IMG/VR virus record: IMGVR_UViG_3300028364_000014
Location: 173,911 to 237,910 of that record
Reading direction: 5' to 3' (one strand)
DNA length: 64,000 nt
Position 1 is the stretch's first letter. Each line of letters opens with the position of its first letter. The notes beneath the pieces were generated by a model. The model was not told the origin of the DNA. It worked only from the letters and a program-made list of their open reading frames with translations, and searched no databases. Of the stretch, positions 17,456 to 37,802 are shown piece by piece. The translations under genes and the position numbers were made by a program.

Positions 17456-20400
17456 CTAACTACACCCAGCATATCCACAAGAGGGACAAGTAAAGCATCC
17501 ACTCTGAAATATAATGTCTTTAGATCCGCAATCTGGGCAGGACATACCCAGTTCTCCATTTAAATCTGTTACATAGCCCATAAGGTGTTTTTTTAATCTA
17601 AAAACAAGAGTGCCTGGTCCAGCATTGTCTACTCCACCTAACGCCTTAACAATGTCAATCATAGGAGTATTATGACGAAAAAGAAACCCAAGCATACGTC
17701 CTATTTTTACATGATTAGATTGTCTAGCAAACTTCTTTTCTACCTCTTCTAATTTCTCATCATCTAATTTATATTTTTTAGCTACTTTTTTTAACTCATC
17801 AATTGCATCCATAGTTATTTCTGTCTTAGAAACAGTGTTTGTTGAAATAAAACACGCAAATGGTTTTCTCATCTCAATATCCATAAATGAAAAATGTACG
17901 TACCATTTAGAACCATTACCACGTAAAATGACCCCTTTGGATGGGTACTCTTCAGGAAGTTTAACAACATCATGTATAATATTACCATTTTCATGTCCCT
18001 TAAAAGCATCCAAAAACTCTTCTTGCCTTTCTTTAATCTCTTTAACCTTATCTTTCTTTTTAGACTCAAGAACAGCTATAGAAGTACCTTCACGATAAGT
18101 AGTACACCCTTTAATTCCTTGCTTATGGACCTTACTATACAACGCTTTAAAATCATCAAAAGATATGTCATTGGGTAAGTTGATCGTTTTACTACTTGAC
18201 TGATCAATATACTTACTTACAGTATTCAAAATAGTAAAATGTTCTTGTACAGACAGCTTTGTAGCGGTAGTAAATTCAGTTTTGCCGTGCTTCAAAGCCT
18301 GATAATATCCATAATCTCTAATAGTTTCAGCTTTACATAATCCTTGATTCTTATCTATTCTATATTCACCATCTGTAGATATAAGAACAATTTCATCAGC
18401 AATACTTTCTTCTTTTAAATAATCTGTTTCAAACCATTCTCCTTTATGTATAGATGGGTATTTAAAATCCATAGGCTTTCCTTCTATCCTATTCCATCTA
18501 GTATACTCTGTAGAAAATACTGGTTCTAACCCACCAGATACATTGCCAGCAAGAATTGCTAGAGTACCAGTAGGAGCTATAGCAGCAACGGCACTATTAC
18601 GTAAACCGTATTTTCTAATAAGGTCGAGTGTCTCCTCGTCTAAAACTTCCCCATGTTTCACATAACCAGTCTCTAATAATTTTTCATCATAAAGGGCAAA
18701 AGGACCCCTTTCTTTAGCAAGCATGGCGGACTTTTTATATGCGGTATTCATAAACAAATGGAGCATCCATTCTGTAAACTCAACACTTTCTTTTCCACCA
18801 TAACGAATGCCCATCATCATAAACAAAGAAGCTAGTCCACAAAAACCAAGACCAATCTTTCGTTTCATCTTAGAAGCATCTTCATACATAGGCAATGGGT
18901 AATCTGATATGTCGATTATATTATCTAAAGCTTCAACCATAATATTTATATCTAACATAAGAAGTTGGTCATTAAATATACCTGTTTCAATGTCGTAGTA
19001 ACGCACCAAATTTAAGGACCCTAAATTACATACATCACCAAGGTCGTACAAAGCCCCTTTGTGTTCTACAATACCGGTGTTTCCGGGTACTTCTCCACAT
19101 TGTCTGGTACTAAACCCATTACAAATAACAGAGTGATAATCTTCTTGGGTTAAACAATACACATCTTCTTTTCCTATAAACTCTATTGCCTTAATTTTTT
19201 CATAGAATTTTTGTTTGTGTATAATTTTGTCTTCTTTCCAAGAAAAAAACTTATCATTTTTATACGGAAGCATGAATCCTATTTGGCTCATAAAACTATC
19301 TCTACTACCGCTAAAAAGTATCAACTCATAATTATCTTTACACCAATATTTCTTTAGCCCTCCCAGTCCATCAGGAAGTTTTCTATAGTCAGCTTTTCTA
19401 CGTAAGTTAATATTAGATCTAATACCAAAATTAGATAGTAAAATTTGTACATCTTTAATTAGGCTTGGCATAGAACTATTTAATCTAATAGAACAACCTG
19501 ACCTAATAGAACTAATGTTCACAGTACCGTCCGCCTGAAATAACCCCTGAAGATACCCTTTTACAAAATCCTTAGTTCCCTTAAATATAAATTCTGGGAC
19601 TTCTTCTTTAATAGACAATAAACCAAACTCTTCAAAAATTCTGTAAAGAACCGCTGATTTAATCTCATACATATCTTTACTCTTAATATAACGAGCTTTT
19701 ACTGTAGTATCTGAATAGTGTCCTCCGTATTCTCTTATCAAAGTATTAGTGGTCTCTACAAGTTCATCTATTAATACATTATCTTTCCCCCACAATCTAA
19801 TGTAAACTTTATTATTCTTACAATTGTATTTTTTATCCCAACCTTCGTATATAGTACCATCACCTGCTATTATTCCTATAAGTCTCCCAAAAGATAAATT
19901 ACCGTTCTTCCCAAAACCACATAACCCAGAACAAATATCTACGCTATCCCCAACCTTAAGGTCCTTTAATTCTTTTGGACCTTCGGGGGTATTAAACTCG
20001 TGGTAATCTGTAGTTTTAATTTCATATCCCGCAGAAGTAGTCAATTTAAATACATCTCTATCTTCACCAGTCTTATATACATGAGTAGTCTTTAGCAGTG
20101 TGGTGCCTATAGAACCATCTATTTGTCTATTATCAGCATAAACCTCATTAGACCCACCTTCTTTATACAAGTCATATATACGCTCCATACCTTTAGATGT
20201 ATGTAATAACATGTCTCCTGTAAAACAAGGATTAGTTGCGCTAATACTACTACTCAAGTAATTAACATTATCCATTTTTCTAATTGTGTCAATAAACAAT
20301 AACCCTGGTTCATTTCTATTATAACTACTCTTCAAAAGAAGTTCCCACAAATAATTAGCTTTTACTGTACGATATACTACAGTAGGATAACCTTTATCTG

Positions 20401-21124
20401 CCCACTTCTCGAAGTTACCATCCCACTCTTTCTCATACTTTTCAAAATTAATATCTGGAAACCAAAGATCCCAATCAAGATCATTTTCCACACAGTACAT
20501 AAATGCGTCTGATATTAAAACCGACATATTCATTTTAGTCAGTCTATTAGGAGTGGATTTAGTTGTAATAAACTCCTCAATGTCTGGGTGATTTACATTC
20601 ATCGTTACCATAGTAGCACCTTTTCTAATACTATTTTTAGACGGCACCCCTTGATACGAATCATTTTTATCAACACTACCTGATGTAATAACTTCAGAAA
20701 CTTTATCAAAAATCTCTAGGAACTTTATTGCTCCTGGTGAAGCTACACCTATCTTCCTAATCAACGTCTTAGCTGGCCTAAAAAAATTGGCACAGAACCC
20801 AACTCCTCCTTCTGTTTTCAGCGTGCACGCATACTTAGTAACCATATCCATAATCCCTTCTAATGAGTCTGGATCTTTTGTCACAGACTCAATGAAGCAA
20901 TTAAAAAGTGTCAACCCTTTTTCATCTACACCTATATTAGAATTAATTCTTCCACCAAATAAAGTCCTAAAATCTAAAATTGACCCTTTTAGTTGGTGCT
21001 TTTTATCCCCGTCATCTGGGAAAATAGAGGACGAAATCCGTTCACAAAAACCATCGTATGTCTCATCTTTATACTTATACTTATTCTCCCAAATCTTTTC
21101 TTGAAAACTGTCTACAAATGTCAT
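17456..21124 (-). CDS. nrdJ: class II (B12-dependent) ribonucleotide reductase with intein
   Basis: FGGRI, TLFNC, NEPGLLF, TNP|CGE, CNLGSLNL, IGLG, APTGT, DQSSSKTIN, KGCTTYR, C-terminal Zn ribbon. Confidence 0.92.
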   Translation of the reverse strand: MTFVDSFQEKIWENKYKYKDETYDGFCERISSSIFPDDGDKKHQLKGSILDFRTLFGGRINSNIGVDEKGLTLFNCFIESVTKDPDSLEGIMDMVTKYACTLKTEGGVGFCANFFRPAKTLIRKIGVASPGAIKFLEIFDKVSEVITSGSVDKNDSYQGVPSKNSIRKGATMVTMNVNHPDIEEFITTKSTPNRLTKMNMSVLISDAFMYCVENDLDWDLWFPDINFEKYEKEWDGNFEKWADKGYPTVVYRTVKANYLWELLLKSSYNRNEPGLLFIDTIRKMDNVNYLSSSISATNPCFTGDMLLHTSKGMERIYDLYKEGGSNEVYADNRQIDGSIGTTLLKTTHVYKTGEDRDVFKLTTSAGYEIKTTDYHEFNTPEGPKELKDLKVGDSVDICSGLCGFGKNGNLSFGRLIGIIAGDGTIYEGWDKKYNCKNNKVYIRLWGKDNVLIDELVETTNTLIREYGGHYSDTTVKARYIKSKDMYEIKSAVLYRIFEEFGLLSIKEEVPEFIFKGTKDFVKGYLQGLFQADGTVNISSIRSGCSIRLNSSMPSLIKDVQILLSNFGIRSNINLRRKADYRKLPDGLGGLKKYWCKDNYELILFSGSRDSFMSQIGFMLPYKNDKFFSWKEDKIIHKQKFYEKIKAIEFIGKEDVYCLTQEDYHSVICNGFSTRQCGEVPGNTGIVEHKGALYDLGDVCNLGSLNLVRYYDIETGIFNDQLLMLDINIMVEALDNIIDISDYPLPMYEDASKMKRKIGLGFCGLASLFMMMGIRYGGKESVEFTEWMLHLFMNTAYKKSAMLAKERGPFALYDEKLLETGYVKHGEVLDEETLDLIRKYGLRNSAVAAIAPTGTLAILAGNVSGGLEPVFSTEYTRWNRIEGKPMDFKYPSIHKGEWFETDYLKEESIADEIVLISTDGEYRIDKNQGLCKAETIRDYGYYQALKHGKTEFTTATKLSVQEHFTILNTVSKYIDQSSSKTINLPNDISFDDFKALYSKVHKQGIKGCTTYREGTSIAVLESKKKDKVKEIKERQEEFLDAFKGHENGNIIHDVVKLPEEYPSKGVILRGNGSKWYVHFSFMDIEMRKPFACFISTNTVSKTEITMDAIDELKKVAKKYKLDDEKLEEVEKKFARQSNHVKIGRMLGFLFRHNTPMIDIVKALGGVDNAGPGTLVFRLKKHLMGYVTDLNGELGMSCPDCGSKDIIFQSGCFTCPSCGYAGCS
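19100..20227 (-). mobile_element. intein (376 aa) with LAGLIDADG endonuclease in NrdJ, C-terminal Gln
   Basis: Starts CFTGD after NP; IIAGDG and LFQADG blocks; ends NGFSTRQ followed by CGE. Confidence 0.9.
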
Positions 21125-22926: not shown

Positions 22927-23998
22927 ATCGTCTATACAATAGCGCTTGATACCAAGACTTATGCCAGTTCCTGTCTGTATTTGCTTTAGAGTTACAAGAA
23001 CGGCACACCGTAATTAAATTACTAGGCTTGCAGTTCTTTTTATTATAATCAATGTGGTGAATTGTTAGGTCGTTTTTATTCGATGAATTACAATATGGAT
23101 TCAAACATTTATTATCATCCCTATTTCTTATATCCTGTTTGTATTCTTTGTCTTTCCAGGCTTCACAATAAGGTTCGAAGGATTTTCCACCTTGCCAATT
23201 AGGGTGCCCTGAACCACATCTAGTTATTGATAGGTTTATACCTTTACAGGTAGGGCACCTATAACCAGTTCTCCAATTACCCCAAGTAATACTATGTCCG
23301 TGCCCTTCAGAACAAACATACTCAAGTTTAATATGTGCATTTTCATACTTTTTACTTAATAAGATATAACCTTCTTTTTTAAACTCCTCTTTTATATATT
23401 CAATTGTTTTTTTATTATTACCAACACAATAAGGACATCTACAACCTGATACCCAATCCCTATAAGTGATACTATGAGAGTGCTTATTAGGACATATGTA
23501 ATCAAGTTTAGTACTGCTATTTTTATACTCCTCACTCAGAAGAATGTACCCCTCTTTTTCTAAAGAATTCCTAACTGTATCAAAACTCGGCTTCAAGTTA
23601 CCATGACAGTAGTAACAACGGTTTCCCGAAGCCCAATCATCCCATCTTATTGAGTGTTTATGCCCTTTAGGACAAATATATTCTAGTTTTTGTTTATTAT
23701 TTTTATAAACAGTAGTTAATAAAGTGTACCCTTCATTATAGAAAGCCTCTCTTATCTTATCTAATGACAGTTTTCTCTTATCGAAGTTACAAAACCTACA
23801 CCTATGTCCTAATAACCAATTACCCCAAGTAATACTATGATAATGACCTCTGGGACACCTATAATCAAGTTTGTTGGTATACCCCTCGTATTCAGTACTA
23901 AGTAAGGTGTATCCTTCTTTTTTAAAATACTCTTTAATGAGTGTAATATTGTACTTCTTATTAGCCATACTATTCCTGGGGTGCACCACATTTAGCAC
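22910..23998 (-). CDS. Zn-ribbon-repeat HNH endonuclease (4 repeats)
   Basis: Same repeat and C-terminal nuclease domain as 21134-22345. Confidence 0.85.
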   Translation of the reverse strand: MLNVVHPRNSMANKKYNITLIKEYFKKEGYTLLSTEYEGYTNKLDYRCPRGHYHSITWGNWLLGHRCRFCNFDKRKLSLDKIREAFYNEGYTLLTTVYKNNKQKLEYICPKGHKHSIRWDDWASGNRCYYCHGNLKPSFDTVRNSLEKEGYILLSEEYKNSSTKLDYICPNKHSHSITYRDWVSGCRCPYCVGNNKKTIEYIKEEFKKEGYILLSKKYENAHIKLEYVCSEGHGHSITWGNWRTGYRCPTCKGINLSITRCGSGHPNWQGGKSFEPYCEAWKDKEYKQDIRNRDDNKCLNPYCNSSNKNDLTIHHIDYNKKNCKPSNLITVCRSCNSKANTDRNWHKSWYQALLYRRYDYRY

Positions 23999-26900
23999 AC
24001 ACTAATTTAGTCCCATAATGGGCATCATTTACAAACTCCATATCACAACACCCACATTCTTCACCATCAATTTTATTTTCACAAGATCCTTTTAACCAGC
24101 AAGGACCTAAAAGCGCATCAGTCTCCATAGTAATTTTACTAAAGTATTTACCAAAACCATCTATTAAAGAATTAGCTACAAGTTCTCTTACAGCATCTAC
24201 TTGATCATTTCTTACCTCTACAACTACTTCATCATGTACTGTTAATAAAAGTTTTGCATCATAATCACTAGCTTCTAACCTATTCACCGTCAAAATCATC
24301 GCTTCTTTAACAGTGTCGGCATTCGCACCTTGCACCCCTGCGTTTTTAGCCGCTCTTTCAACTGCACGTTGTTTAGTTACCCTATCTGGATGTCCATATG
24401 GGGGTATATTATAATATCTTTTTCTCCCACTTATAGTCTGCGAAAAACCATTTTTAACTGCACCCCGTGCCGCGTGCTCTAAATAAGTTTTAACCCCACT
24501 ATACCGTTCAAAATAAGTATTAATCATATTATCTGCTTCTTTTTCTTTTATTTTAAGTCTAGCTGCCAATCCATATTTTGATAGCCCATAACAATTATGA
24601 ACTACAAACCCATTGGCTGAAAAATACGGGTGCTCATTTACTGATATATCATATACTTTAGCAATACCAACCCTTTTAATGCTTTTAATATCTAAAGGAA
24701 TAATATTATTGGAGTAAATAAAATCTAAAAATTTATCTAATTTGTGCAGTCTTTTAATACATATATTTCCTATAGCATTATTAGTGTATTTACTACAATT
24801 ATATAGTGTATCATAATAAACCCTGTTAGACTTTAAATCACTAGGGATAGATTTAATCATTTTATTTAATATCTTAGATTGATTACGTAATGAATAAGAA
24901 GACTCGTTATATTTACTTTTTACTTTATATTTATTATTTTTGTAAGCCGTTACAAAACCGATATCGTTAATAAATTTTTGCCTAAACTTATTGGTAATTA
25001 TGTCTAATGTATAATATAACTCTCCCGGATAATTTTTTCTTGTTTCTTTTAAAATAGAAGAAACATAACCAAAATTTAAAAACATTAATTGGATATCCTT
25101 TATAAGGGCTATAGATTTACTACTGTATTGAATTTTTACTGTATTACCATTTTTCTTTATAGTACCATCACCCTCCATTAACCAACGTAAAAACATTACT
25201 TGCACATCTTTTTTACTACATTTTACACACTCCGGTACACATACTGAATCTGTTTTTAATTTCTCAGAGTACTTAAAAATACTATACAACCATTCACAAA
25301 ATAATACTGAGTTAATACTATATTGTATTTTTTCAGCACTACTCACTCTTGAAAATCTAGTACTAAACAATTTAACAAATAGTTTATCTATATTTTGTAT
25401 GAATTCTGAAGACGCTTTTTTAGAAAAACAAAAAGACACTAAACTATATTTATCCCTACCTCTAACTTTTATTAAAGAACCTTCTGAAACAAACAGCCCT
25501 AAGAAGGCCGCCCAATCTTTAGTTAGGTATTTAGGTAAATTAAAGTGCTTATAATTCGTATTTTTTTGCACATCAAATTTATCATACTTATATAAACTAT
25601 TATTAAATAAATTAGAATTATTTTTTATACAAAGTTGCTCTGTACTAATATCAATATCTTTTAATTTTTTATCTACATAGTTCCCCTCCTTATCAATAAC
25701 CTTCATTACATGATCTAAGGTAGTTTTTAATGTATATCCAAATTGGGTTTCAATTTCGAATACTTCTTTTTTGCCCATATATCTATGAGCTTTTACACTA
25801 TTAGACCCTTTATCGTGAGATACCACATCACCTATTTCTACGTCTTTAATTGCTTTAATCCCACTATCCGTGATAATCTCAGTATCTCCATGAATACAAA
25901 GACCAAAATTAATTGCTTTAGCCTTACTTCTACTATCATGCTTAACTTCCTCTATAGGAATACTAAATACTTCAGAAGCAGTTCTAGTATGTAAGTCGAT
26001 CCCATGAGCATAACACTCAATAAAAACAGGATCTTCTGAAAGATTACCAAGAATCCTAAGCTCGGCACCAGACATATCTGCAGTAACTAAACTATACCCT
26101 GGCTTAGCGATAAAACAACTTCTAAATCTTTGTTTCTTTGGTATATTCTGTAAATTTGGAGCACTAGAACTCATACGCCCAGTTTGTACCATCTGCCTAA
26201 AACGAGTATGAAGTCTACCAGTTAAAGGATGAATCTTTTCTAGCAACGTTTCACCGTACGTAGACATTAATTTATTAAGTTTTCTATAAGAAAGAATTTT
26301 TTCAATAATAGGGATATCTTTATACTTTTCTAGTGAGCTGGCAGAAGTACTATCTAGTTTTACCCCTTGAGTTCTTAGTGCTTTTAATAATTGGGAAGGG
26401 CTATCTATATTAACAACAGGTATACCAAATAATATATTTTGTCCATGGTCAGTAGATAATAACTGATTGATGTCTTCTTGAGCCTCATCACGTTCTTGCT
26501 CAATATCTTTCATCATTATTCGCCACTTATCTATATCTAATGTTATCCCATTTAACTCCATCTCACACATTGGTTTAGTAAACTCAAACTCTAATCTACA
26601 AACATTATCAAATCCTTCCGCGTGTATACGAGGTAATTGTAATTCTCTAATTAAAGCAAGAATCGCAACATCATTAGCAGCGTATTCAATCTGGTAAGGT
26701 TTAAACACCTGATTATAATCCTGAAAAGTTCCGCCAGGCTCTTTAGCCATAGAAAGACCTAAATATTTTTTAACTAGGTCCTTCAAACTAGCTCCCTTCG
26801 CATTAACTCCTAAATTAAATAACTGCTCTACCAGCATAGTATCATAAATATTCTCAAGATAGTACCCAGCGTGTACCTTTAACATTTTCATATCAAATAC

Positions 26901-27200
26901 AGCATTCTGTAATAATTTAAGTATCTTAGGATTATTAAGAACTGGTGCCAATTGGTCAAGATGTACAGTTGAATGTTCTGTGTCACTTCTCACATCAAAA
27001 ACAAATGACTTATTTGGAATACCTATTTGTACTAAAACAATCTTCTTTGTATAAGGGTCAAAACCTGTTGTTTCTGTATCTACCTCTATCATAGGATGTC
27101 TAAGAATCTCAGCTATTACTGAGGCTACATCCTCTGCCCTAGTAATATAAGCAAAGTTCGGCTTAGGTAGAAAAAATTCTTCTACATCAAAAGTACTCAT
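23970..27200 (-). CDS. polA: family A DNA polymerase (3'-5' exonuclease plus polymerase) with intein
   Basis: VDTETTG, RMSSSAPNLQNIP, ADMSGAELR, KAINFGL|CYG, TVHDEV. Confidence 0.93.
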   Translation of the reverse strand: MSTFDVEEFFLPKPNFAYITRAEDVASVIAEILRHPMIEVDTETTGFDPYTKKIVLVQIGIPNKSFVFDVRSDTEHSTVHLDQLAPVLNNPKILKLLQNAVFDMKMLKVHAGYYLENIYDTMLVEQLFNLGVNAKGASLKDLVKKYLGLSMAKEPGGTFQDYNQVFKPYQIEYAANDVAILALIRELQLPRIHAEGFDNVCRLEFEFTKPMCEMELNGITLDIDKWRIMMKDIEQERDEAQEDINQLLSTDHGQNILFGIPVVNIDSPSQLLKALRTQGVKLDSTSASSLEKYKDIPIIEKILSYRKLNKLMSTYGETLLEKIHPLTGRLHTRFRQMVQTGRMSSSAPNLQNIPKKQRFRSCFIAKPGYSLVTADMSGAELRILGNLSEDPVFIECYAHGIDLHTRTASEVFSIPIEEVKHDSRSKAKAINFGLCIHGDTEIITDSGIKAIKDVEIGDVVSHDKGSNSVKAHRYMGKKEVFEIETQFGYTLKTTLDHVMKVIDKEGNYVDKKLKDIDISTEQLCIKNNSNLFNNSLYKYDKFDVQKNTNYKHFNLPKYLTKDWAAFLGLFVSEGSLIKVRGRDKYSLVSFCFSKKASSEFIQNIDKLFVKLFSTRFSRVSSAEKIQYSINSVLFCEWLYSIFKYSEKLKTDSVCVPECVKCSKKDVQVMFLRWLMEGDGTIKKNGNTVKIQYSSKSIALIKDIQLMFLNFGYVSSILKETRKNYPGELYYTLDIITNKFRQKFINDIGFVTAYKNNKYKVKSKYNESSYSLRNQSKILNKMIKSIPSDLKSNRVYYDTLYNCSKYTNNAIGNICIKRLHKLDKFLDFIYSNNIIPLDIKSIKRVGIAKVYDISVNEHPYFSANGFVVHNCYGLSKYGLAARLKIKEKEADNMINTYFERYSGVKTYLEHAARGAVKNGFSQTISGRKRYYNIPPYGHPDRVTKQRAVERAAKNAGVQGANADTVKEAMILTVNRLEASDYDAKLLLTVHDEVVVEVRNDQVDAVRELVANSLIDGFGKYFSKITMETDALLGPCWLKGSCENKIDGEECGCCDMEFVNDAHYGTKLVCAKCGAPQE
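24594..25898 (-). mobile_element. intein (435 aa) with LAGLIDADG endonuclease in PolA motif B
   Basis: Starts CIHGD; LFVSEG and LMEGDG blocks; ends NGFVVHN followed by C. Confidence 0.92.
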
Positions 27201-29019: not shown

Positions 29020-29958
29020 TTACCTCTTCTTTATTCCTGTAGGACTAACTTCCTTCAAACGTCTACCGCATTTATTACAATTTACTCTCTTTTGAAAACC
29101 ATCAATTACTTCTTTACCACAACTACTACATACGTAATTTACTTCCAAATTTTCGTAAACCAATTGATTCATTTTTAAAAACTCTTTTTGTTCTTTTAAT
29201 TGCGTCATTAATTCTGAAATTTTAAAATCAATATCAGGGATAATAGTTGCTAGTGTTCTATCACAAAGAGACGAAGTCTCAATAGGTATAACTTTAATAT
29301 TTAAATCATAAACTTTTGAAATCATTTTTACCAACTCATATTTTGATACAGAAGATGGTGAGTAAATATGTCTTACACCGCACCAAAATAAATCATGTTT
29401 AATTATTTTTTCACATATTTTCGCAAACTGAAGACAAGTAATCCCATTCCAATAATGATTAGTAAAACCATTTACTTTTTTATTTTTGTTTGACTTTACC
29501 CATTCTAATAAAGAAAGTTTATTATTTATCTCTTCCCCTAGGATTGATGTACGTATTACAGTAGAATTAAGAGGCTCACCTAATGATTTTGACTTACCAT
29601 AGTCATCTAAAGAAGTATGATCCGAAACTTCTGTGTAACTCCCTTCTGAGCCATCAAACACACAATCTGATGTAGGATGAATTAACTTAGCTTCCCTATT
29701 GTAACAAAACTCTTGTACCTTCAAAGGAAATGCAGTATTAATTATAGAAAATTGTTGTTGACTAGTATTACCCCTCTGCGGAATCCTTCCTATACAATTT
29801 ATAACTACATCACCACTTTTAACATCCAGTTCATATAAACTATTGTCATCAGCCCTCAAAGTTTGTCTCGTTGTGCCGATGGTATTAAAGTTTTTTTTCA
29901 AATAGGTATATACATATCTTCCTAACATACCGTTTTTACCTAAAACTATAATTTTCAT
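29020..29958 (-). CDS. RmlD-like NDP-sugar 4-reductase (SDR) with C-terminal Zn ribbon
   Basis: GKNGMLG, INCIG, TSDCVFDG, YGKSK, IRTS; C-terminal CSSC...CNKC. Confidence 0.85.
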   Translation of the reverse strand: MKIIVLGKNGMLGRYVYTYLKKNFNTIGTTRQTLRADDNSLYELDVKSGDVVINCIGRIPQRGNTSQQQFSIINTAFPLKVQEFCYNREAKLIHPTSDCVFDGSEGSYTEVSDHTSLDDYGKSKSLGEPLNSTVIRTSILGEEINNKLSLLEWVKSNKNKKVNGFTNHYWNGITCLQFAKICEKIIKHDLFWCGVRHIYSPSSVSKYELVKMISKVYDLNIKVIPIETSSLCDRTLATIIPDIDFKISELMTQLKEQKEFLKMNQLVYENLEVNYVCSSCGKEVIDGFQKRVNCNKCGRRLKEVSPTGIKKR

Positions 29959-32045
29959 ACTAAAAATCCCCCATTATTAAGCAACTTCGTTAAGTATTCT
30001 TGGGACTGTACATCGTCAGAAGAAGAAAAACTATCAAAAAGCACTTTAGGTTTTGAGCTTAAATGACTATAGTCTCTACCCATATCAAGCTCTGGCAACA
30101 TAATGTAATAATCCTCATTAAACACATGTGCTCTATGCGACTCATGCTCAGAAATTAAAACCTCGTGTTTCTTTTCTCCTTCACGTAAACCTATTATATC
30201 TATTGAAGTATGTTCATTACCGTAATGATTTATTAACACTTTAGCTAAATCACCGATATAGAACCTAGGCATATTCATTACAAACGTCTCTCCACCCACA
30301 CTATTTTCTGTGGCCTGAAATAATAAAGTTATAGCCTCAGGCAGTGTAAGAAAAAATCTTGTCATGTCAGCATCTGTGACTGTTATTTTATTAAACTGTT
30401 TTATCTGATCTATAAACAAAGGTACTACACTTCCATTAGACCCAAGCACATTACCACCTCTAATGCACACGAAGTCTGTATCTTTAGATAATGTGTTGGC
30501 ATGAATGATTAATTTTTCTCCTACGGCTTTTGTGAAACCATAGGTGTTGGTTGGGGCTACAGCCTTATCTGTACTAACATCAATGACCTTCTTTATCTTA
30601 TGTTTAATAGCTGAATTTATCACATTTATTGTACCAGTTATATTAGTTTTTATAGCTTCCTGTGGCTGATTTTCACATACAGGTACATGTTTTAGGGCTG
30701 CACAATTATGTGTAGCATAACCATACACATTGTAGGTATGATCTCCAGATACACTTAAATTATATACTACGACCTTTTTCTTTTTTTTACTTACGCTTTT
30801 GACAAGATAAAAAATATAATCATCAGTTATAAAATGTTTATAACTATTGGTTGAGCCATCAACATAAAAATTTTTATTTTTATTACTACTACCTATAGAA
30901 ATTTGATAAGTTTGTTTAAGATTTTCTTTTTTAACAGTTCTTCCACCTATAATTAAATCTTTTTTCGCTCTTGGTAATTTCATAAACCCTGTAGGAATAT
31001 TAATCATGCCAAACAATAATCTTAATTGATATGCCAAATTTTCAGATACTGTAGACATTTTACCATTAGAATAACACCCATCACCACAGAAGTACCCTAG
31101 CAATAACTGTTCAATTTTATTCATATCTTTTAATTTAAAAACCCACGATGGAATTATTTTATTTTCTGCCCCTTTACCAAACTCTTCAAATTTTTTTACT
31201 ATGTCTTTACCACACACCGTAATGGTACAAGAATTGTGATTAGTGTAGTAACGACTTCCTTTTTTTCCAAAATTTTCCAATAAAATATTTTCAACATCAG
31301 TAAGATAATCATCTTCTTTACTGTTAAAAGTAAATCTAACCGCATATTTACGTAAGTCTCCTTCCGCAAGGTAATATCCGAACAACCTCATCATTGCACT
31401 GTTATATTTTGTGTCTTCAGAATTTATTCTTACCTTTGGTATCGCAATATAATCACCTTTTTGTATTTCACCTGCCTTAATCCACTCAGCGCTATCTTTT
31501 TTATAATGTTCTGGGCATTCTCCCTTTAATTTATTATTACATGCAGGAGAACACGCAGTTCTATATGATTTTGGACACTGTTTAGAAGGTTTCCATACAA
31601 AATGTGTATGATCACTTGTAGATGTTATAGGAATATTAGAAAAATAAGAAGCAACATCTACCATCTCTTCATCAATTTTACGACTTATTAAGTTTTCAAC
31701 TTTATTTAGTCGCCCATCAGATGAAAAAACATAATCATTTATTTTAACATCCTCTATATTTTTAACTTCATTTTCACAAACAACTTTAGTTTTAACTGGA
31801 AAACAATGATACACATAATCTATACCCATACTAAATAATCTATCAATAGCTTCTGCATCTCTAACATCTCCTATTATAAACTTAAGTCTATCATCATTGA
31901 ACTTTCTATCAGTAGTCACTTGAGCTAATTCCCCTCTTGACAATAATATAATCATCTTTGGATCTTTGTCAAGCAACTGCTTTGTTAATTCATGAGCCCA
32001 TGAACCTGTCCCACCTGTAATCAATATTGTTTTATCTTTAAACAT
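29955..32045 (-). CDS. UDP-GlcNAc 4,6-dehydratase (FnlA/CapE/PseB-like) with intein
   Basis: ITGGTGS, GDVRD, H|CAALKHVP, STDKAV...YG.TK, RGGNVLGSNGSVVPLF, MTRFFL, GLREGEK.HE. Confidence 0.9.
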   Translation of the reverse strand: MFKDKTILITGGTGSWAHELTKQLLDKDPKMIILLSRGELAQVTTDRKFNDDRLKFIIGDVRDAEAIDRLFSMGIDYVYHCFPVKTKVVCENEVKNIEDVKINDYVFSSDGRLNKVENLISRKIDEEMVDVASYFSNIPITSTSDHTHFVWKPSKQCPKSYRTACSPACNNKLKGECPEHYKKDSAEWIKAGEIQKGDYIAIPKVRINSEDTKYNSAMMRLFGYYLAEGDLRKYAVRFTFNSKEDDYLTDVENILLENFGKKGSRYYTNHNSCTITVCGKDIVKKFEEFGKGAENKIIPSWVFKLKDMNKIEQLLLGYFCGDGCYSNGKMSTVSENLAYQLRLLFGMINIPTGFMKLPRAKKDLIIGGRTVKKENLKQTYQISIGSSNKNKNFYVDGSTNSYKHFITDDYIFYLVKSVSKKKKKVVVYNLSVSGDHTYNVYGYATHNCAALKHVPVCENQPQEAIKTNITGTINVINSAIKHKIKKVIDVSTDKAVAPTNTYGFTKAVGEKLIIHANTLSKDTDFVCIRGGNVLGSNGSVVPLFIDQIKQFNKITVTDADMTRFFLTLPEAITLLFQATENSVGGETFVMNMPRFYIGDLAKVLINHYGNEHTSIDIIGLREGEKKHEVLISEHESHRAHVFNEDYYIMLPELDMGRDYSHLSSKPKVLFDSFSSSDDVQSQEYLTKLLNNGGFLV
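30705..31805 (-). mobile_element. intein (367 aa) with LAGLIDADG endonuclease in the dehydratase
   Basis: Starts CFPVKT; YYLAEGD and YFCGDG blocks; ends VYNLSV...YATHN followed by C. Confidence 0.9.
31945..31972 (-). promoter_or_regulatory. promoter-motif copy inside the dehydratase CDS
   Basis: aatata 31945-31950, tgtcaa 31967-31972, N16 spacing. Confidence 0.55.
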
Positions 32046-32514
32046 TGTATACTCCTACAAAATAATTATCCAAACCAGTTAAACCAGTAATTCTATTCCA
32101 TCCTATAAAATCGTCTGTAACCCAAAGAGATTTATGATGATCGTACTCATTTTTATAACACCACAACTTAGGATTATTTACATTTATTGAATTATCCGTC
32201 CACCATAATGGTGTCAATAATATAATATTTCTACATGTAATATTTTTTGCTTGTTCTAATATAATACATCCCCGCTCTTTGTCAAGGTGCTCTATAAAAT
32301 CTATCATTAATACGACATCAAAACTATTTTTCAAAAAAGGTAAATCTTTTTCTGTTAAATCTAATAAAATATCAGGATTAACCTTGTCCCAAGCATCTAA
32401 CGTAATTACTTTATTACATACTAAATCAGAAGAACGTCGCTTGTCTCCACATCCTACATCAATAACATTATCTTCCTTCTGTACATAAGCCTTAATCAAA
32501 TCATTTATATTCAT
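32038..32514 (-). CDS. class I SAM-dependent methyltransferase
   Basis: VIDVGCG, FDVV...IEHL. Confidence 0.8.
   Translation of the reverse strand: MNINDLIKAYVQKEDNVIDVGCGDKRRSSDLVCNKVITLDAWDKVNPDILLDLTEKDLPFLKNSFDVVLMIDFIEHLDKERGCIILEQAKNITCRNIILLTPLWWTDNSINVNNPKLWCYKNEYDHHKSLWVTDDFIGWNRITGLTGLDNYFVGVYNV
32258..32285 (-). promoter_or_regulatory. promoter-motif copy inside the methyltransferase CDS
   Basis: aatata 32258-32263, tgtcaa 32280-32285, N16 spacing. Confidence 0.6.
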
Positions 32515-34191: not shown

Positions 34192-34737
34192 TTATAACTC
34201 TCCTATTATTGTATAAAGAGAAGTTCGGTCATCTTTTACATACGGCTCTACGGTAACTTTTCCCTGACTACGTAATTCTCTAAACTCCTCTCTACTACTA
34301 GTGGTGTGTTGAAAATCTATAATATTTATTTTTCCATTACCAACTAAAATTTCTTCTATTTTAATATCATTATGACTAACCTCTATTCTATTTAAAGCAT
34401 CAAGTATGTATTCAACCTGATCCTGCCAATCAATAGGTCTTGAATGTTTATTTATCTCCATCCCCATGTAATCCATTACTATTGAATTAGTGTTAAAACT
34501 AATTACTTTAGGCACCCTATCAAAATCTTTCATCTTGTTCAACCAAAAAACTTCTTTATTAACAAAGTCATAATGGCTATACTTATCATGTATAACTTTT
34601 TTAACAAAGACAGCTTTAACTTGAGAAGTAACTTGTAAAGATGCATCAAGGTAATATATTATAGACGTATTATTAGATCGCATTACAGATGTATAACCTC
34701 CTATCATGCTGTCCGGGATCATCCAAAGATTTAGCAT
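34192..34737 (-). CDS. protein-kinase-like sugar/LPS kinase (probable start 34683)
   Basis: VFVKK, E..WL, HNDIKIEEIL, IIDF. Confidence 0.65.
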   Translation of the reverse strand: MLNLWMIPDSMIGGYTSVMRSNNTSIIYYLDASLQVTSQVKAVFVKKVIHDKYSHYDFVNKEVFWLNKMKDFDRVPKVISFNTNSIVMDYMGMEINKHSRPIDWQDQVEYILDALNRIEVSHNDIKIEEILVGNGKINIIDFQHTTSSREEFRELRSQGKVTVEPYVKDDRTSLYTIIGEL

Positions 34738-36734: not shown

Positions 36735-37802
36735 TTATTTCCCTAAAAGTATGTTTATTACTGTGTCTGATACATCGTCTTTTGTATAGTCCTCGGGAGG
36801 AACCCAAAAATATGTCCTATCTTTAATAACATTAAACACATTTACTATTTGAGCAGTATCTGTGCCTACTAAAATATTAGAGCCGCACTCTATTGTTTCT
36901 TGTCTTTCTGTACTCTCTCTAATAGTAATAGAGGGTACATTAAAAAGGCAAGCTTCTTCTTGGCAGGTGCCAGAGTCAGAAATAATAACTTTTGCACTTT
37001 GTTCTAGTTTTATAAAATCAAAGAAGCCAAAAGGCTCGGACATTAATACACCATCAGCCACAGTAATCTTAAATTTATCAATTTTATCTTTAGTTCTAGG
37101 ATGCACAGAAAAAATTACTTTCATCTGCTTACTGATAATATTCAAAGCACTCACTATACCTAGTAACGACTCTTTATTGTCTACGTTCTCAGTTCTGTGT
37201 GCGGTCACAAGCACAAAATCCCTATACCCAAGACCTAGTTTATTAAGTATATCACTATTATCTATCTCATTAATATAACTCTGAATAACTTCATTAATAG
37301 GATTACCTATTTTAAACACAAAATTCTTATGGAAACCTTCAGCCAATAAGTTTTGTTTACTATTATCTGTGTATGGTAAATTGTACTTCGACACATGATC
37401 TATAATACGCCTATTAGTTTCTTCTGGAAGACGTTCATCATAGCATCTATTCCCCGCTTCCATATGATAGACAGGTATATTATATTTTTCTGCTATTATA
37501 GATAGTAAGCCAGAATTAGTGTCGCCTAACAATAATACCTTATCTGGTTTCTCTTTTAATAAAACTCGTTCAAATTGAATGATGGCACTGGATAAGAAGG
37601 TTCCAATAGAGTGCCCTTCGTTAGTAAAATAATAATCAGGCTTACGTATTTTTAGCTCATCAAAAAATTTACCACTCAAATTATAATCATAGTTCTGATT
37701 TGTGTAAATAAATATATGATCTACTACCCCATCCAACTTATTTATTAACACACTAAGGCGGATTAATTCTGGTCTTGTCCCCGCTACTGTTAAAATTTTC
37801 AT
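36735..37802 (-). CDS. non-hydrolysing UDP-HexNAc 2-epimerase (FnlC/CapG/WbjD-like)
   Basis: GTRPELIRLS, QNYDYNL, LGDTNS, HMEAGNRC, HRTENVD, SDSGT.QEE. Confidence 0.92.
   Translation of the reverse strand: MKILTVAGTRPELIRLSVLINKLDGVVDHIFIYTNQNYDYNLSGKFFDELKIRKPDYYFTNEGHSIGTFLSSAIIQFERVLLKEKPDKVLLLGDTNSGLLSIIAEKYNIPVYHMEAGNRCYDERLPEETNRRIIDHVSKYNLPYTDNSKQNLLAEGFHKNFVFKIGNPINEVIQSYINEIDNSDILNKLGLGYRDFVLVTAHRTENVDNKESLLGIVSALNIISKQMKVIFSVHPRTKDKIDKFKITVADGVLMSEPFGFFDFIKLEQSAKVIISDSGTCQEEACLFNVPSITIRESTERQETIECGSNILVGTDTAQIVNVFNVIKDRTYFWVPPEDYTKDDVSDTVINILLGK

What the first reader, a model, noticed from the sequence alone, without database searches (positions are those of the whole stretch)
30705..31805. 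Full-length homing intein in a nucleotide-sugar dehydratase
Seen: 367-aa LAGLIDADG intein inserted at VYH|CAALKHVP, a conserved motif of the FnlA/CapD family. Known: most inteins sit in replication, recombination and nucleotide-metabolism proteins at conserved sites. Inference: the glycan pathway is under strong purifying selection and shared among co-infecting relatives; splicing could also gate glycan synthesis.
Basis: partly seen in the sequence, partly recalled or inferred. Interest (0 to 1): 0.65.

Follow-up and report, generated by a model that had tools for sequence, protein, structure and literature searches.

The report
Homing intein in phage sugar dehydratase
A salt-lake jumbo phage carries a complete, apparently mobile self-splicing protein element (intein) inside a sugar-modifying enzyme gene; it is a standard intein in a host gene and position that I found in no paper of the held library.

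Summary
ORF 29955..32045 (-) encodes 696 aa. Residues 81-447 (window 30705..31805) are a 367-aa class-1 intein with a double-motif LAGLIDADG endonuclease. It splits a Polysacc_synt_2 (PseB/FnlA/CapE-type) UDP-GlcNAc 4,6-dehydratase at DYVYH|C...HN|CAALKHVP.

All splicing landmarks are present. The predicted fold (pLDDT 88) matches the TliVMA, PI-SceI and PI-PfuI inteins. A syntenic relative (L008) has the same gene without the insert, and its DNA alignment breaks exactly at the intein ends.

More than 120 intein-free alleles at 65% identity or more exist, against about five intein-bearing clusters. The bearers sit in three separate clades of the host-gene tree (AU p = 0.0003).

In a sister strain the intein plus short flanks is base-identical while the outer parts of the gene differ, mostly by silent changes.

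Related phages carry a different intein at a second site (STDKA|C). One also has an intein in the neighbouring 2-epimerase.

The genome holds six inteins. The nearest relatives of this one often sit in other glycan enzymes.

No cellular genome showed the junction, but that scan was narrow.

Verdict: a real, probably active homing intein and a new member of a known kind. Regulated splicing that gates glycan synthesis has no support.

The parts
29955..32045 (-). Precursor ORF, 696 aa: UDP-GlcNAc 4,6-dehydratase-like SDR (Polysacc_synt_2) interrupted by an intein
31806..32045 (-). N-extein, residues 1-80; Rossmann TGGTGSWA at 31995..32018; ends DYVYH
   Evidence: aligns to L008 6028-6243
30705..31805 (-). 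Intein, 367 aa, from Cys1 to His366-Asn367
31788..31805 (-). Block A, CFPVKT, with the Cys1 nucleophile
31602..31625 (-). Block B, T63-x-x-H66 within TSTSDHTH
31506..31580 (-). Cys-rich loop (C77, C85, C89, C97, H100) between the Hint N-lobe and the endonuclease. Four Cys are present in every full-length family member. Low model confidence; possible metal site (inferred).
31356..31385 (-). LAGLIDADG motif 1, LFGYYLAEGD; E148 invariant
31074..31106 (-). LAGLIDADG motif 2, LLLGYFCGDGC; D242 invariant. K216 and P219 upstream at 31143..31163
30705..30773 (-). Blocks F and G, VVVYNLSVSGDHTYNV and YGYATHN
29955..30704 (-). C-extein, residues 448-696 plus stop. +1 Cys at 30702..30704 replaces the Leu/Met of intein-free alleles. 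Catalytic T492-D493-K494 ... Y502-x3-K506 at 30528..30572
29020..29958 (-). Downstream RmlD-like reductase (FnlB-like partner) with a C-terminal CxxC...CxxC tail
36735..37802 (-). WecB-like non-hydrolysing UDP-GlcNAc 2-epimerase, intein-free here. The empty site VIISD|SGTCQEE lies at 36974/36975; sister strain L021 has a 438-aa intein there
24594..25895 (-). Separate intein in DNA polymerase A (residues 436-869 of ORF 23970..27200), absent from the PolA of L008
17456..21124 (-). Ribonucleotide reductase large subunit carrying another LAGLIDADG intein (boundaries not mapped)

Best explanation
This is a genuine class-1 intein with an intact double-motif LAGLIDADG homing endonuclease. It sits in the UDP-GlcNAc 4,6-dehydratase gene (PseB/FnlA/CapE type) of a tailed jumbo phage from salt lakes.

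Inferred mechanism. The 696-aa precursor is translated. The Hint domain then excises itself using Cys1, T63xxH66, H366-N367 and the +1 Cys, and ligates residues 1-80 to 448-696. The product is a 329-aa enzyme that carries Cys where intein-free alleles have Leu or Met.

Inferred spread. During mixed infection the freed endonuclease cuts the intein-less HxAALKHV site of a related phage. Repair then copies the intein, together with the adjacent Cys codon and short flanks.

Shown here: the anatomy, the exact absence from an orthologous allele, the predicted fold, the patchy distribution on the host-gene tree, and the identical intein tract between strains. Splicing and DNA cleavage themselves are inferred.
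For: Coordinates and junctions are exact, and Polysacc_synt_2 is split at profile positions 81/82.

The catalytic and structural intein residues are invariant across relatives 32-74% identical: C1, T..H, E148, K216, P219, D242, H366, N367.

The AlphaFold model has pLDDT 87.8 and pTM 0.87. Its best Foldseek hits are full-length endonuclease-bearing inteins: 7qsu (E 7e-20), 1vde, 2cw7 and 1dq3.

The intein-free syntenic allele L008 has a precise breakpoint. More than 120 intein-free clusters at 65% identity or more exist, the closest 89% identical in the C-extein.

Intein-bearing alleles fall in three starred clades, and the AU test rejects their monophyly at p = 0.0003.

Against sister strain L021, window 31973..30343 (the intein plus 168 and 362 bp of flank) is base-identical. 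The outer gene parts hold 27 differences, mostly silent. Run X3 shows the same picture.

Intein-bearing alleles keep TDK...YxxxK and the Rossmann motif over about 35% divergence, which implies a functional, spliced product.
Against: No experiment shows splicing or cleavage.

Intein and extein pairwise identities are about equal. Old vertical residence with repeated precise loss therefore fits the tree as well as repeated gain does.

The identical tract in L021 lies in a generally mosaic region, with a further 3.6 kb identical downstream. It is not specific proof of homing.

No near-identical intein-less form was seen in the four runs laid.

The block F position that is Asp in the genome's ClpB-like intein is Asn here.
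Confidence: 0.8

Rival explanations
1. An old resident intein whose endonuclease no longer homes. It is inherited vertically and lost repeatedly by recombination with intein-less alleles. It splices but is not currently mobile.
For: Intein and extein identities between bearers are nearly equal: 74/74/68, 68/65/67 and 63/59/64 %. No intein-less near-identical form was found in four runs.
Against: The endonuclease acidic residues, the conserved Lys-x-x-Pro and both LAGLIDADG motifs are invariant across 32-74% identical relatives, which argues for continued selection on nuclease function. The intein DNA is 1101/1101 identical between strains whose extein ends differ.
Confidence: 0.13
2. A domesticated conditional switch. 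Splicing responds to redox state or metal (Cys1/Cys+1 pair, Cys4 loop) and times virion or host glycan synthesis during infection.
For: The precursor separates the cofactor-binding N-extein from the catalytic C-extein. A conserved four-Cys loop is present. Related phages carry inteins at a second site of the same enzyme and in the neighbouring 2-epimerase.
Against: More than 95% of close alleles work without any intein. The distribution is sporadic, as for a selfish element. No feature specific to regulated splicing was found.
Confidence: 0.05
3. A non-splicing insertion that inactivates the gene (pseudogene), or an assembly chimera.
For: None beyond the absence of experimental data.
Against: The frame is open across 696 codons. 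Extein differences from the sister strain are mostly silent. Catalytic motifs are kept in all bearers. The same junctions were recovered in independent samples from 2017 and 2019.
Confidence: 0.02

Closest known systems
Endonuclease-bearing class-1 inteins with solved structures (TliVMA 7qsu, PI-SceI 1vde, PI-TkoII 2cw7, PI-PfuI 1dq3)
   Same: Hint splicing domain interrupted by a two-motif LAGLIDADG endonuclease. Cys1, TxxH, HN and a +1 nucleophile. Foldseek E 7e-20 to 4e-14, TM 0.55-0.67.
   Different: Only 14-18% sequence identity. The host is a sugar-nucleotide dehydratase of a phage, not a V-ATPase, polymerase or RNR. It carries an extra four-Cys loop after block B.
UDP-glucose/GDP-mannose dehydrogenase inteins of Euryarchaeota (Novikova et al. 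2016, PMC4760082, table 2; 'Mja UDP GD' of InBase from my own knowledge)
   Same: An intein inside a nucleotide-sugar enzyme, COG category M. Relatives of the present intein also sit in UDPG_MGDP_dh proteins.
   Different: Different enzyme family and insertion site, and archaeal chromosomes rather than a phage.
Phage inteins in terminase, RNR, polymerase and helicase (Novikova 2016 table 3; mycobacteriophage surveys, from my own knowledge)
   Same: The same genome carries inteins in TerL, a helicase, RNR, PolA and a ClpB-like ATPase. The ClpB-like one is 29% identical to the dehydratase intein and shares the Cys loop.
   Different: The dehydratase is not a nucleic-acid or ATPase protein. I found no record of this host family or site in the held literature.
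PseB/FlaA1 (2gn4), Pen (6bwc), CapE (3vvb), FnlA (4j2o)
   Same: The intein-free allele P0122 matches them at E 3e-70 to 2e-64. [quoted passage not shown]
   Different: Scores are below the NCBIfam equivalog cut-offs: PseB 299.5 against 407.75, FnlA 231.5 against 730. None of the solved enzymes carries an intein.
Megavirus chilensis UDP-L-RhaNAc/QuiNAc genes Mg534-536 (my own knowledge, not checked here)
   Same: A virus-encoded trio of FnlA-like dehydratase, reductase and 2-epimerase for 2-acetamido-2,6-dideoxy-L-hexoses.
   Different: A eukaryotic giant virus, with no inteins reported in those genes.

Membership tests
Intein (class 1 protein-splicing element) | Cys/Ser at position 1 and block B TxxH | tested here: met
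   C81 of the precursor; T63-x-x-H66 conserved in all 7 full-length relatives
Intein (class 1 protein-splicing element) | C-terminal His-Asn followed by a Cys/Ser/Thr +1 nucleophile | tested here: met
   H366-N367 invariant, +1 Cys448
Intein (class 1 protein-splicing element) | In-frame insertion exactly absent from orthologous alleles | tested here: met
   L008 allele: the alignment breaks at window 31806/30701. More than 120 intein-free clusters exist.
Intein (class 1 protein-splicing element) | Hint fold | tested here: met
   Model pLDDT 87.8; top Foldseek hits are inteins
Intein (class 1 protein-splicing element) | Protein splicing actually occurs | not testable with these tools
   Only indirect evidence: exteins under purifying selection and catalytic motifs kept in bearers
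LAGLIDADG homing endonuclease (two-motif, monomeric) | Two LAGLIDADG motifs, each with the catalytic acidic residue | tested here: met
   LFGYYLAEGD (E148) and LLLGYFCGDGC (D242), both invariant. Pfam LAGLIDADG_3 E 1e-8. I-DmoI-like fold hits.
LAGLIDADG homing endonuclease (two-motif, monomeric) | Cleaves the intein-less allele and spreads horizontally | tested here: inconclusive
   Patchy on the extein tree (3 changes; AU p 0.0003) and an identical tract between strains. However, intein and extein divergence are equal, and cleavage cannot be tested here.
PseB (TIGR03589) / FnlA (TIGR04130) equivalogs | Score above the curated equivalog cut-off | tested here: not met
   For P0122: PseB 299.5 against 407.75; FnlA 231.5 against 730. 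It is filed only at the Polysacc_synt_2 / PseB-FnlA-CapE clade level.
[quoted passage not shown] | [ST]DKxnYx3K catalytic signature and a GxxGxxG Rossmann motif | tested here: met
   T492-D493-K494 ... Y502-x3-K506 and TGGTGSWA. The signature is taken from PMC8987622.
[quoted passage not shown] | Enzymatic conversion of UDP-GlcNAc | not testable with these tools
   Not assayed

The most novel reading that the evidence does not exclude
Glycan-biosynthesis genes of this jumbo-phage lineage are a preferred niche of one intein clade. That clade carries a conserved four-Cys loop. Its members act as redox- or metal-sensitive switches that delay sugar-nucleotide synthesis until a set stage of infection.
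Probability: 0.05. Interest if true: 0.8.

Novelty: new member of a known kind. Interest (0 to 1): 0.4.

Why it matters
Inteins are usually described as residents of replication, repair and nucleotide-metabolism proteins. Here a canonical homing intein occupies the cofactor-site motif of a sugar-nucleotide dehydratase in a phage. Relatives of that phage hold a second, unrelated intein next to the catalytic Asp-Lys of the same enzyme, and a third in the neighbouring 2-epimerase.

The nearest relatives of this intein recur in glycosyltransferases, UDP-sugar dehydrogenases and a DegT aminotransferase. This widens the known host range of inteins to conserved glycan enzymes.

It also gives a natural population in which to study the homing cycle. 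That population holds bearers, more than 120 empty alleles and near-identical strains from salt lakes.

Finally, it supplies new compact inteins whose +1 residue and flanks are defined, for possible engineering use. It does not change how inteins are thought to work.

Tried and rejected
1. A megablast of the gene against 50,697 phage records gave no match. By tblastn, cultured phages share only the intein part (25% identity, in thymidylate synthase, methylase, RNR and other hosts) or only the extein part. None has both.

2. The junction pattern for HN|C-AA-x-KHV gave 5 hits in the genome collection, all out of frame or with stops. That is about the number expected by chance (my estimate, about 4). 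In viral contigs it found only the same phage. In JGI metagenomes 3 of 11 hits were real, all the same intein. The pattern proved too narrow: it misses P0264, which reads HN|CSALKHV. The absence in cellular genomes is therefore weak evidence.

3. Laying contigs of four runs to look for an intein-less joint found none.

4. Nine literature searches found no paper linking an intein to PseB, FnlA, CapE, WecB or an NAD-dependent epimerase/dehydratase. The supplement of Novikova 2016 is not held.

5. A Terminase_6N search of the genome gave no hit. TerL was found by PHROGs instead.

6. A Pfam scan of six long multi-intein relatives showed no recognisable exteins.

7. The in-silico spliced extein was written only to a scratch file and was never sent to any search tool. 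The N- and C-exteins were used by reference, and the natural intein-free allele P0122 stood in for the joined product.

8. I considered and rejected another genetic code, a BIL/Hint-only domain (the endonuclease and HN|C are present) and an assembly chimera.

Full report
**1.

ORF window 29955..32045 on the minus strand encodes 696 aa. Residues 81-447 (367 aa) map to window 30705..31805.

Pfam finds Polysacc_synt_2 (E 6.6e-91) in two pieces that meet at profile positions 81/82. Between them lie LAGLIDADG_3 (E 1e-8) and sub-threshold Intein_splicing and Hom_end_hint hits.

**2. The genome**

The window is the last 64 kb of a 237,910-bp IMG/VR virus record that CheckV rates 87% complete.

- It encodes a DnaB-like helicase, a clamp loader, PolA, RNR and a ligase.
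- It encodes a large terminase subunit (phrog_2), so it is a tailed jumbo phage.
- Its nearest cultured relatives are distant: the clamp loader is at most 33% identical.
- The gene is held by 24 lake-water and salt-lake metagenome runs from 2017 and 2019.

**3. The host protein**

The natural intein-free allele P0122 scores best with the NCBIfam model PseB (299.5 bits, cut-off 407.75), then FnlA (231.5 bits, cut-off 730). Among solved structures it matches Pen 6bwc, FlaA1 2gn4, CapE 3vvb and FnlA 4j2o at E 3e-70 to 2e-64.

The C-extein carries T492-D493-K494 ... Y502-x3-K506. [quoted passage not shown] The N-extein carries the Rossmann motif TGGTGSWA.

The surrounding genes are:

- an RmlD-like reductase immediately downstream;
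- a WecB-like non-hydrolysing 2-epimerase (TIGR00236, 251 bits) 4.7 kb upstream;
- between them, glycosyltransferases, methyltransferases and a RIO1-like kinase, with a KdsC-like phosphatase further downstream.

The trio of dehydratase, reductase and 2-epimerase resembles FnlA/B/C. That pathway assignment is my inference. I therefore file the enzyme at the level of the PseB/FnlA/CapE clade, not as an equivalog of either.

**4. The intein's anatomy**

An alignment of seven full-length relatives that are 32-74% identical (A2) shows these residues as invariant or conserved:

- Cys1 and T63-x-x-H66 (block B);
- LAGLIDADG motif 1 with E148;
- K216-x-x-P219;
- LAGLIDADG motif 2 with D242;
- block F, then H366-N367;
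- Cys at +1 in every bearer.

A model built on that alignment has mean pLDDT 87.8 and pTM 0.87. Its best Foldseek matches in the PDB are full-length endonuclease-bearing inteins: TliVMA 7qsu (E 7e-20), PI-SceI 1vde, PI-TkoII 2cw7, PhoVMA 7qst and PI-PfuI 1dq3. I-DmoI-type endonucleases match the central domain.

One unusual feature is a loop after block B with four conserved Cys (C77, C85, C89, C97, plus H100). The model is uncertain there (pLDDT about 45). The loop is shared with the ClpB-like intein of the same genome and with P0264. A metal site is possible but untested.

**5. Empty alleles**

IMG/VR contig 3300022188_000229 (L008, 92.9 kb) has the same gene order: dehydratase, RmlD-like gene, phosphatase-like gene, clamp loader, PolA. 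Its dehydratase is 330 aa and reads DYVFH-M-AALKHV. The DNA alignment to the window stops at 31806 and resumes at 30701.

A search with that allele returned more than 120 clusters at 65% identity or more. All are intein-free, and several lie on contigs of 128-318 kb. The closest are 89% identical to the window's C-extein and 95% identical to its N-extein.

At the +1 position these alleles have Leu (90) or Met (12), never Cys. The Cys therefore travels with the intein.

**6. Bearers and distribution**

Intein-bearing relatives at this site are few.

- P0002: 99% identical overall, intein 100% identical.
- P0003, P0004 and P0005: 62-71% identical overall, in syntenic phage contexts.
- More distant: P0006, P0008 and P0264, in other Polysacc_synt_2 proteins within glycan clusters.
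- P0042: a different extended SDR, with the intein at the homologous HxAA position.

On an 80-row tree built from extein columns only, the phage bearers fall in three separately supported clades among empty alleles, which needs three changes of state. The AU test rejects a tree that holds them together (p = 0.0003).

Pairwise intein and extein identities are about equal. Repeated gain and repeated precise loss therefore cannot be told apart.

**7. Recent exchange between strains**

Against the sister contig L021 (ENA), window 31973..30343 is base-identical. This tract is the 1101-bp intein plus 168 bp of N-side flank and 362 bp of C-side flank. The first 72 bp of the gene hold 12 differences, and the last 370 bp hold 15.

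These differences fall in 25 codons, 21 of them silent and 4 replacement. Contigs from run X3 show the same boundaries.

This pattern fits co-conversion during homing. However, the whole region is mosaic: the next 3.6 kb are identical, and then the PolA intein region diverges. So it shows recombination among co-occurring relatives rather than homing specifically.

The four runs laid showed contigs bridging both junctions and no intein-less joint.

**8. Other inteins in the same pathway and genome**

- Five related phage proteins (P0007, P0009-P0012) lack the site-a intein. They carry a different intein, of LAGLIDADG_2 type, at STDKA|C...HN|CSPTNLYG. That site lies between the catalytic Asp-Lys and Y-x3-K.
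- L021 also has a 438-aa intein in the 2-epimerase at VISD|C...SHN|SGTCQEE. The window's epimerase has that site empty at 36974/36975.
- The genome itself has six inteins: in TerL, a ResIII helicase, a ClpB-like ATPase, RNR, PolA and the dehydratase.

**9. Wider relatives**

The exhaustive search with the intein alone found 4,995 representatives at E <= 1e-3, but only 21 at E <= 1e-30. The top three are the SDR-hosted P0006, P0042 and P0264.

I scanned the 67 other representatives of up to 900 aa. Their host domains were:

- Glycos_transf_1: 9;
- UDP-glucose/GDP-mannose dehydrogenase: 4;
- Glycos_transf_2, RGP, DegT and Polysacc_synt_2: 1 each;
- Pyr_redox_2: 4;
- DNA methylase: 2;
- SufB: 1.

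Longer hits are multi-intein proteins without recognisable exteins. At least 19 of the 150 best representatives therefore sit in glycan enzymes. This sample was chosen by length, so I do not claim enrichment.

**10. Comparison with the literature**

Novikova et al. 2016 (PMC4760082) list UDP-GlcDH as an intein host in Euryarchaeota, and terminases as phage hosts. 'Dehydratase' and 'epimerase' do not occur in the main text. No held paper links an intein to PseB, FnlA, CapE, FlaA1 or WecB.

The DNA scan for the junction found no case in one genome each of 185,579 prokaryote species. The pattern was narrow, so this is weak evidence of absence.

**11. Verdict**

This is a real, complete and probably splicing-competent intein, plausibly still mobile (confidence 0.8). 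It is a new host family and site for a known kind of element.

The idea that splicing gates glycan synthesis has no specific support.

The in-silico joined extein was not sent to any search tool. The exteins were searched by reference, and the natural empty allele stood in for the joined product.

Noticed in passing
L021:372-2750 (sister strain); empty site at window 36974/36975: A 438-aa LAGLIDADG intein sits in the WecB-like UDP-GlcNAc 2-epimerase at the conserved VISD|SGTCQEE motif in a near-identical strain. The window's copy lacks it. It is only marginally similar to the dehydratase intein (36% over 50 aa).
   Followed up: partly
P0007, P0009-P0012; L010:5844-7928: A second, unrelated intein (LAGLIDADG_2 type, about 362 aa) occupies another site of the same dehydratase family, STDKA|C...HN|CSPTNLYG, next to the catalytic Asp-Lys, in related phages.
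   Followed up: partly
G000:C1 30832-33849, 119443-121959, 167342-170512; window 17456-21124 and 23970-27200: The phage has six inteins in 238 kb: in TerL, a ResIII helicase, a ClpB-like AAA+ ATPase, the RNR large subunit, PolA and the dehydratase. The ClpB-like intein is the closest paralogue (29% identity, E 1e-29).
   Followed up: partly
window 31506-31580 (intein residues 76-100): A conserved four-Cys (plus His) loop lies between block B and the endonuclease domain. It is shared by all family members and by the ClpB-like intein, and has low model confidence. A metal site is possible.
   Followed up: no
window 24594-25895: The PolA intein is absent from the PolA of L008 and L010 (643 and 639 aa). 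In L021 the intein region is much more diverged (the 5' part of PolA is 83.5% identical at DNA level) than the identical 3.6 kb just before it. This suggests a different intein allele at the same site.
   Followed up: partly
P0270, P0279, P0297, P0304, P0315, P0332 and members of alignment A3: Nearest relatives of this intein (28-39% identity) recur in Glycos_transf_1, Glycos_transf_2, UDP-sugar dehydrogenase, RGP and DegT proteins of metagenomes. At least 19 of the 150 best representatives sit in glycan enzymes.
   Followed up: partly
window 29020-29958: The RmlD-like reductase ends in a CxxC...CxxC tail (CSSCGK...CNKCGR; weak HypA-like Pfam hit).
   Followed up: no
window 34192-34737: A small RIO1-like kinase gene lies inside the glycosyltransferase/methyltransferase cluster. 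It is conserved in L021.
   Followed up: no
P0013-P0028: Many metagenomic homologues of 528-532 aa are fusions of a methyltransferase with the dehydratase. In the window the methyltransferase (32038-32514) is a separate ORF that overlaps the dehydratase start by 8 bp.
   Followed up: no
window 1-64000: 55 of the 56 ORFs of 150 aa or more lie on the minus strand. GC skew is negative throughout, GC is 30-35%, and there are no tRNA genes in the window.
   Followed up: no
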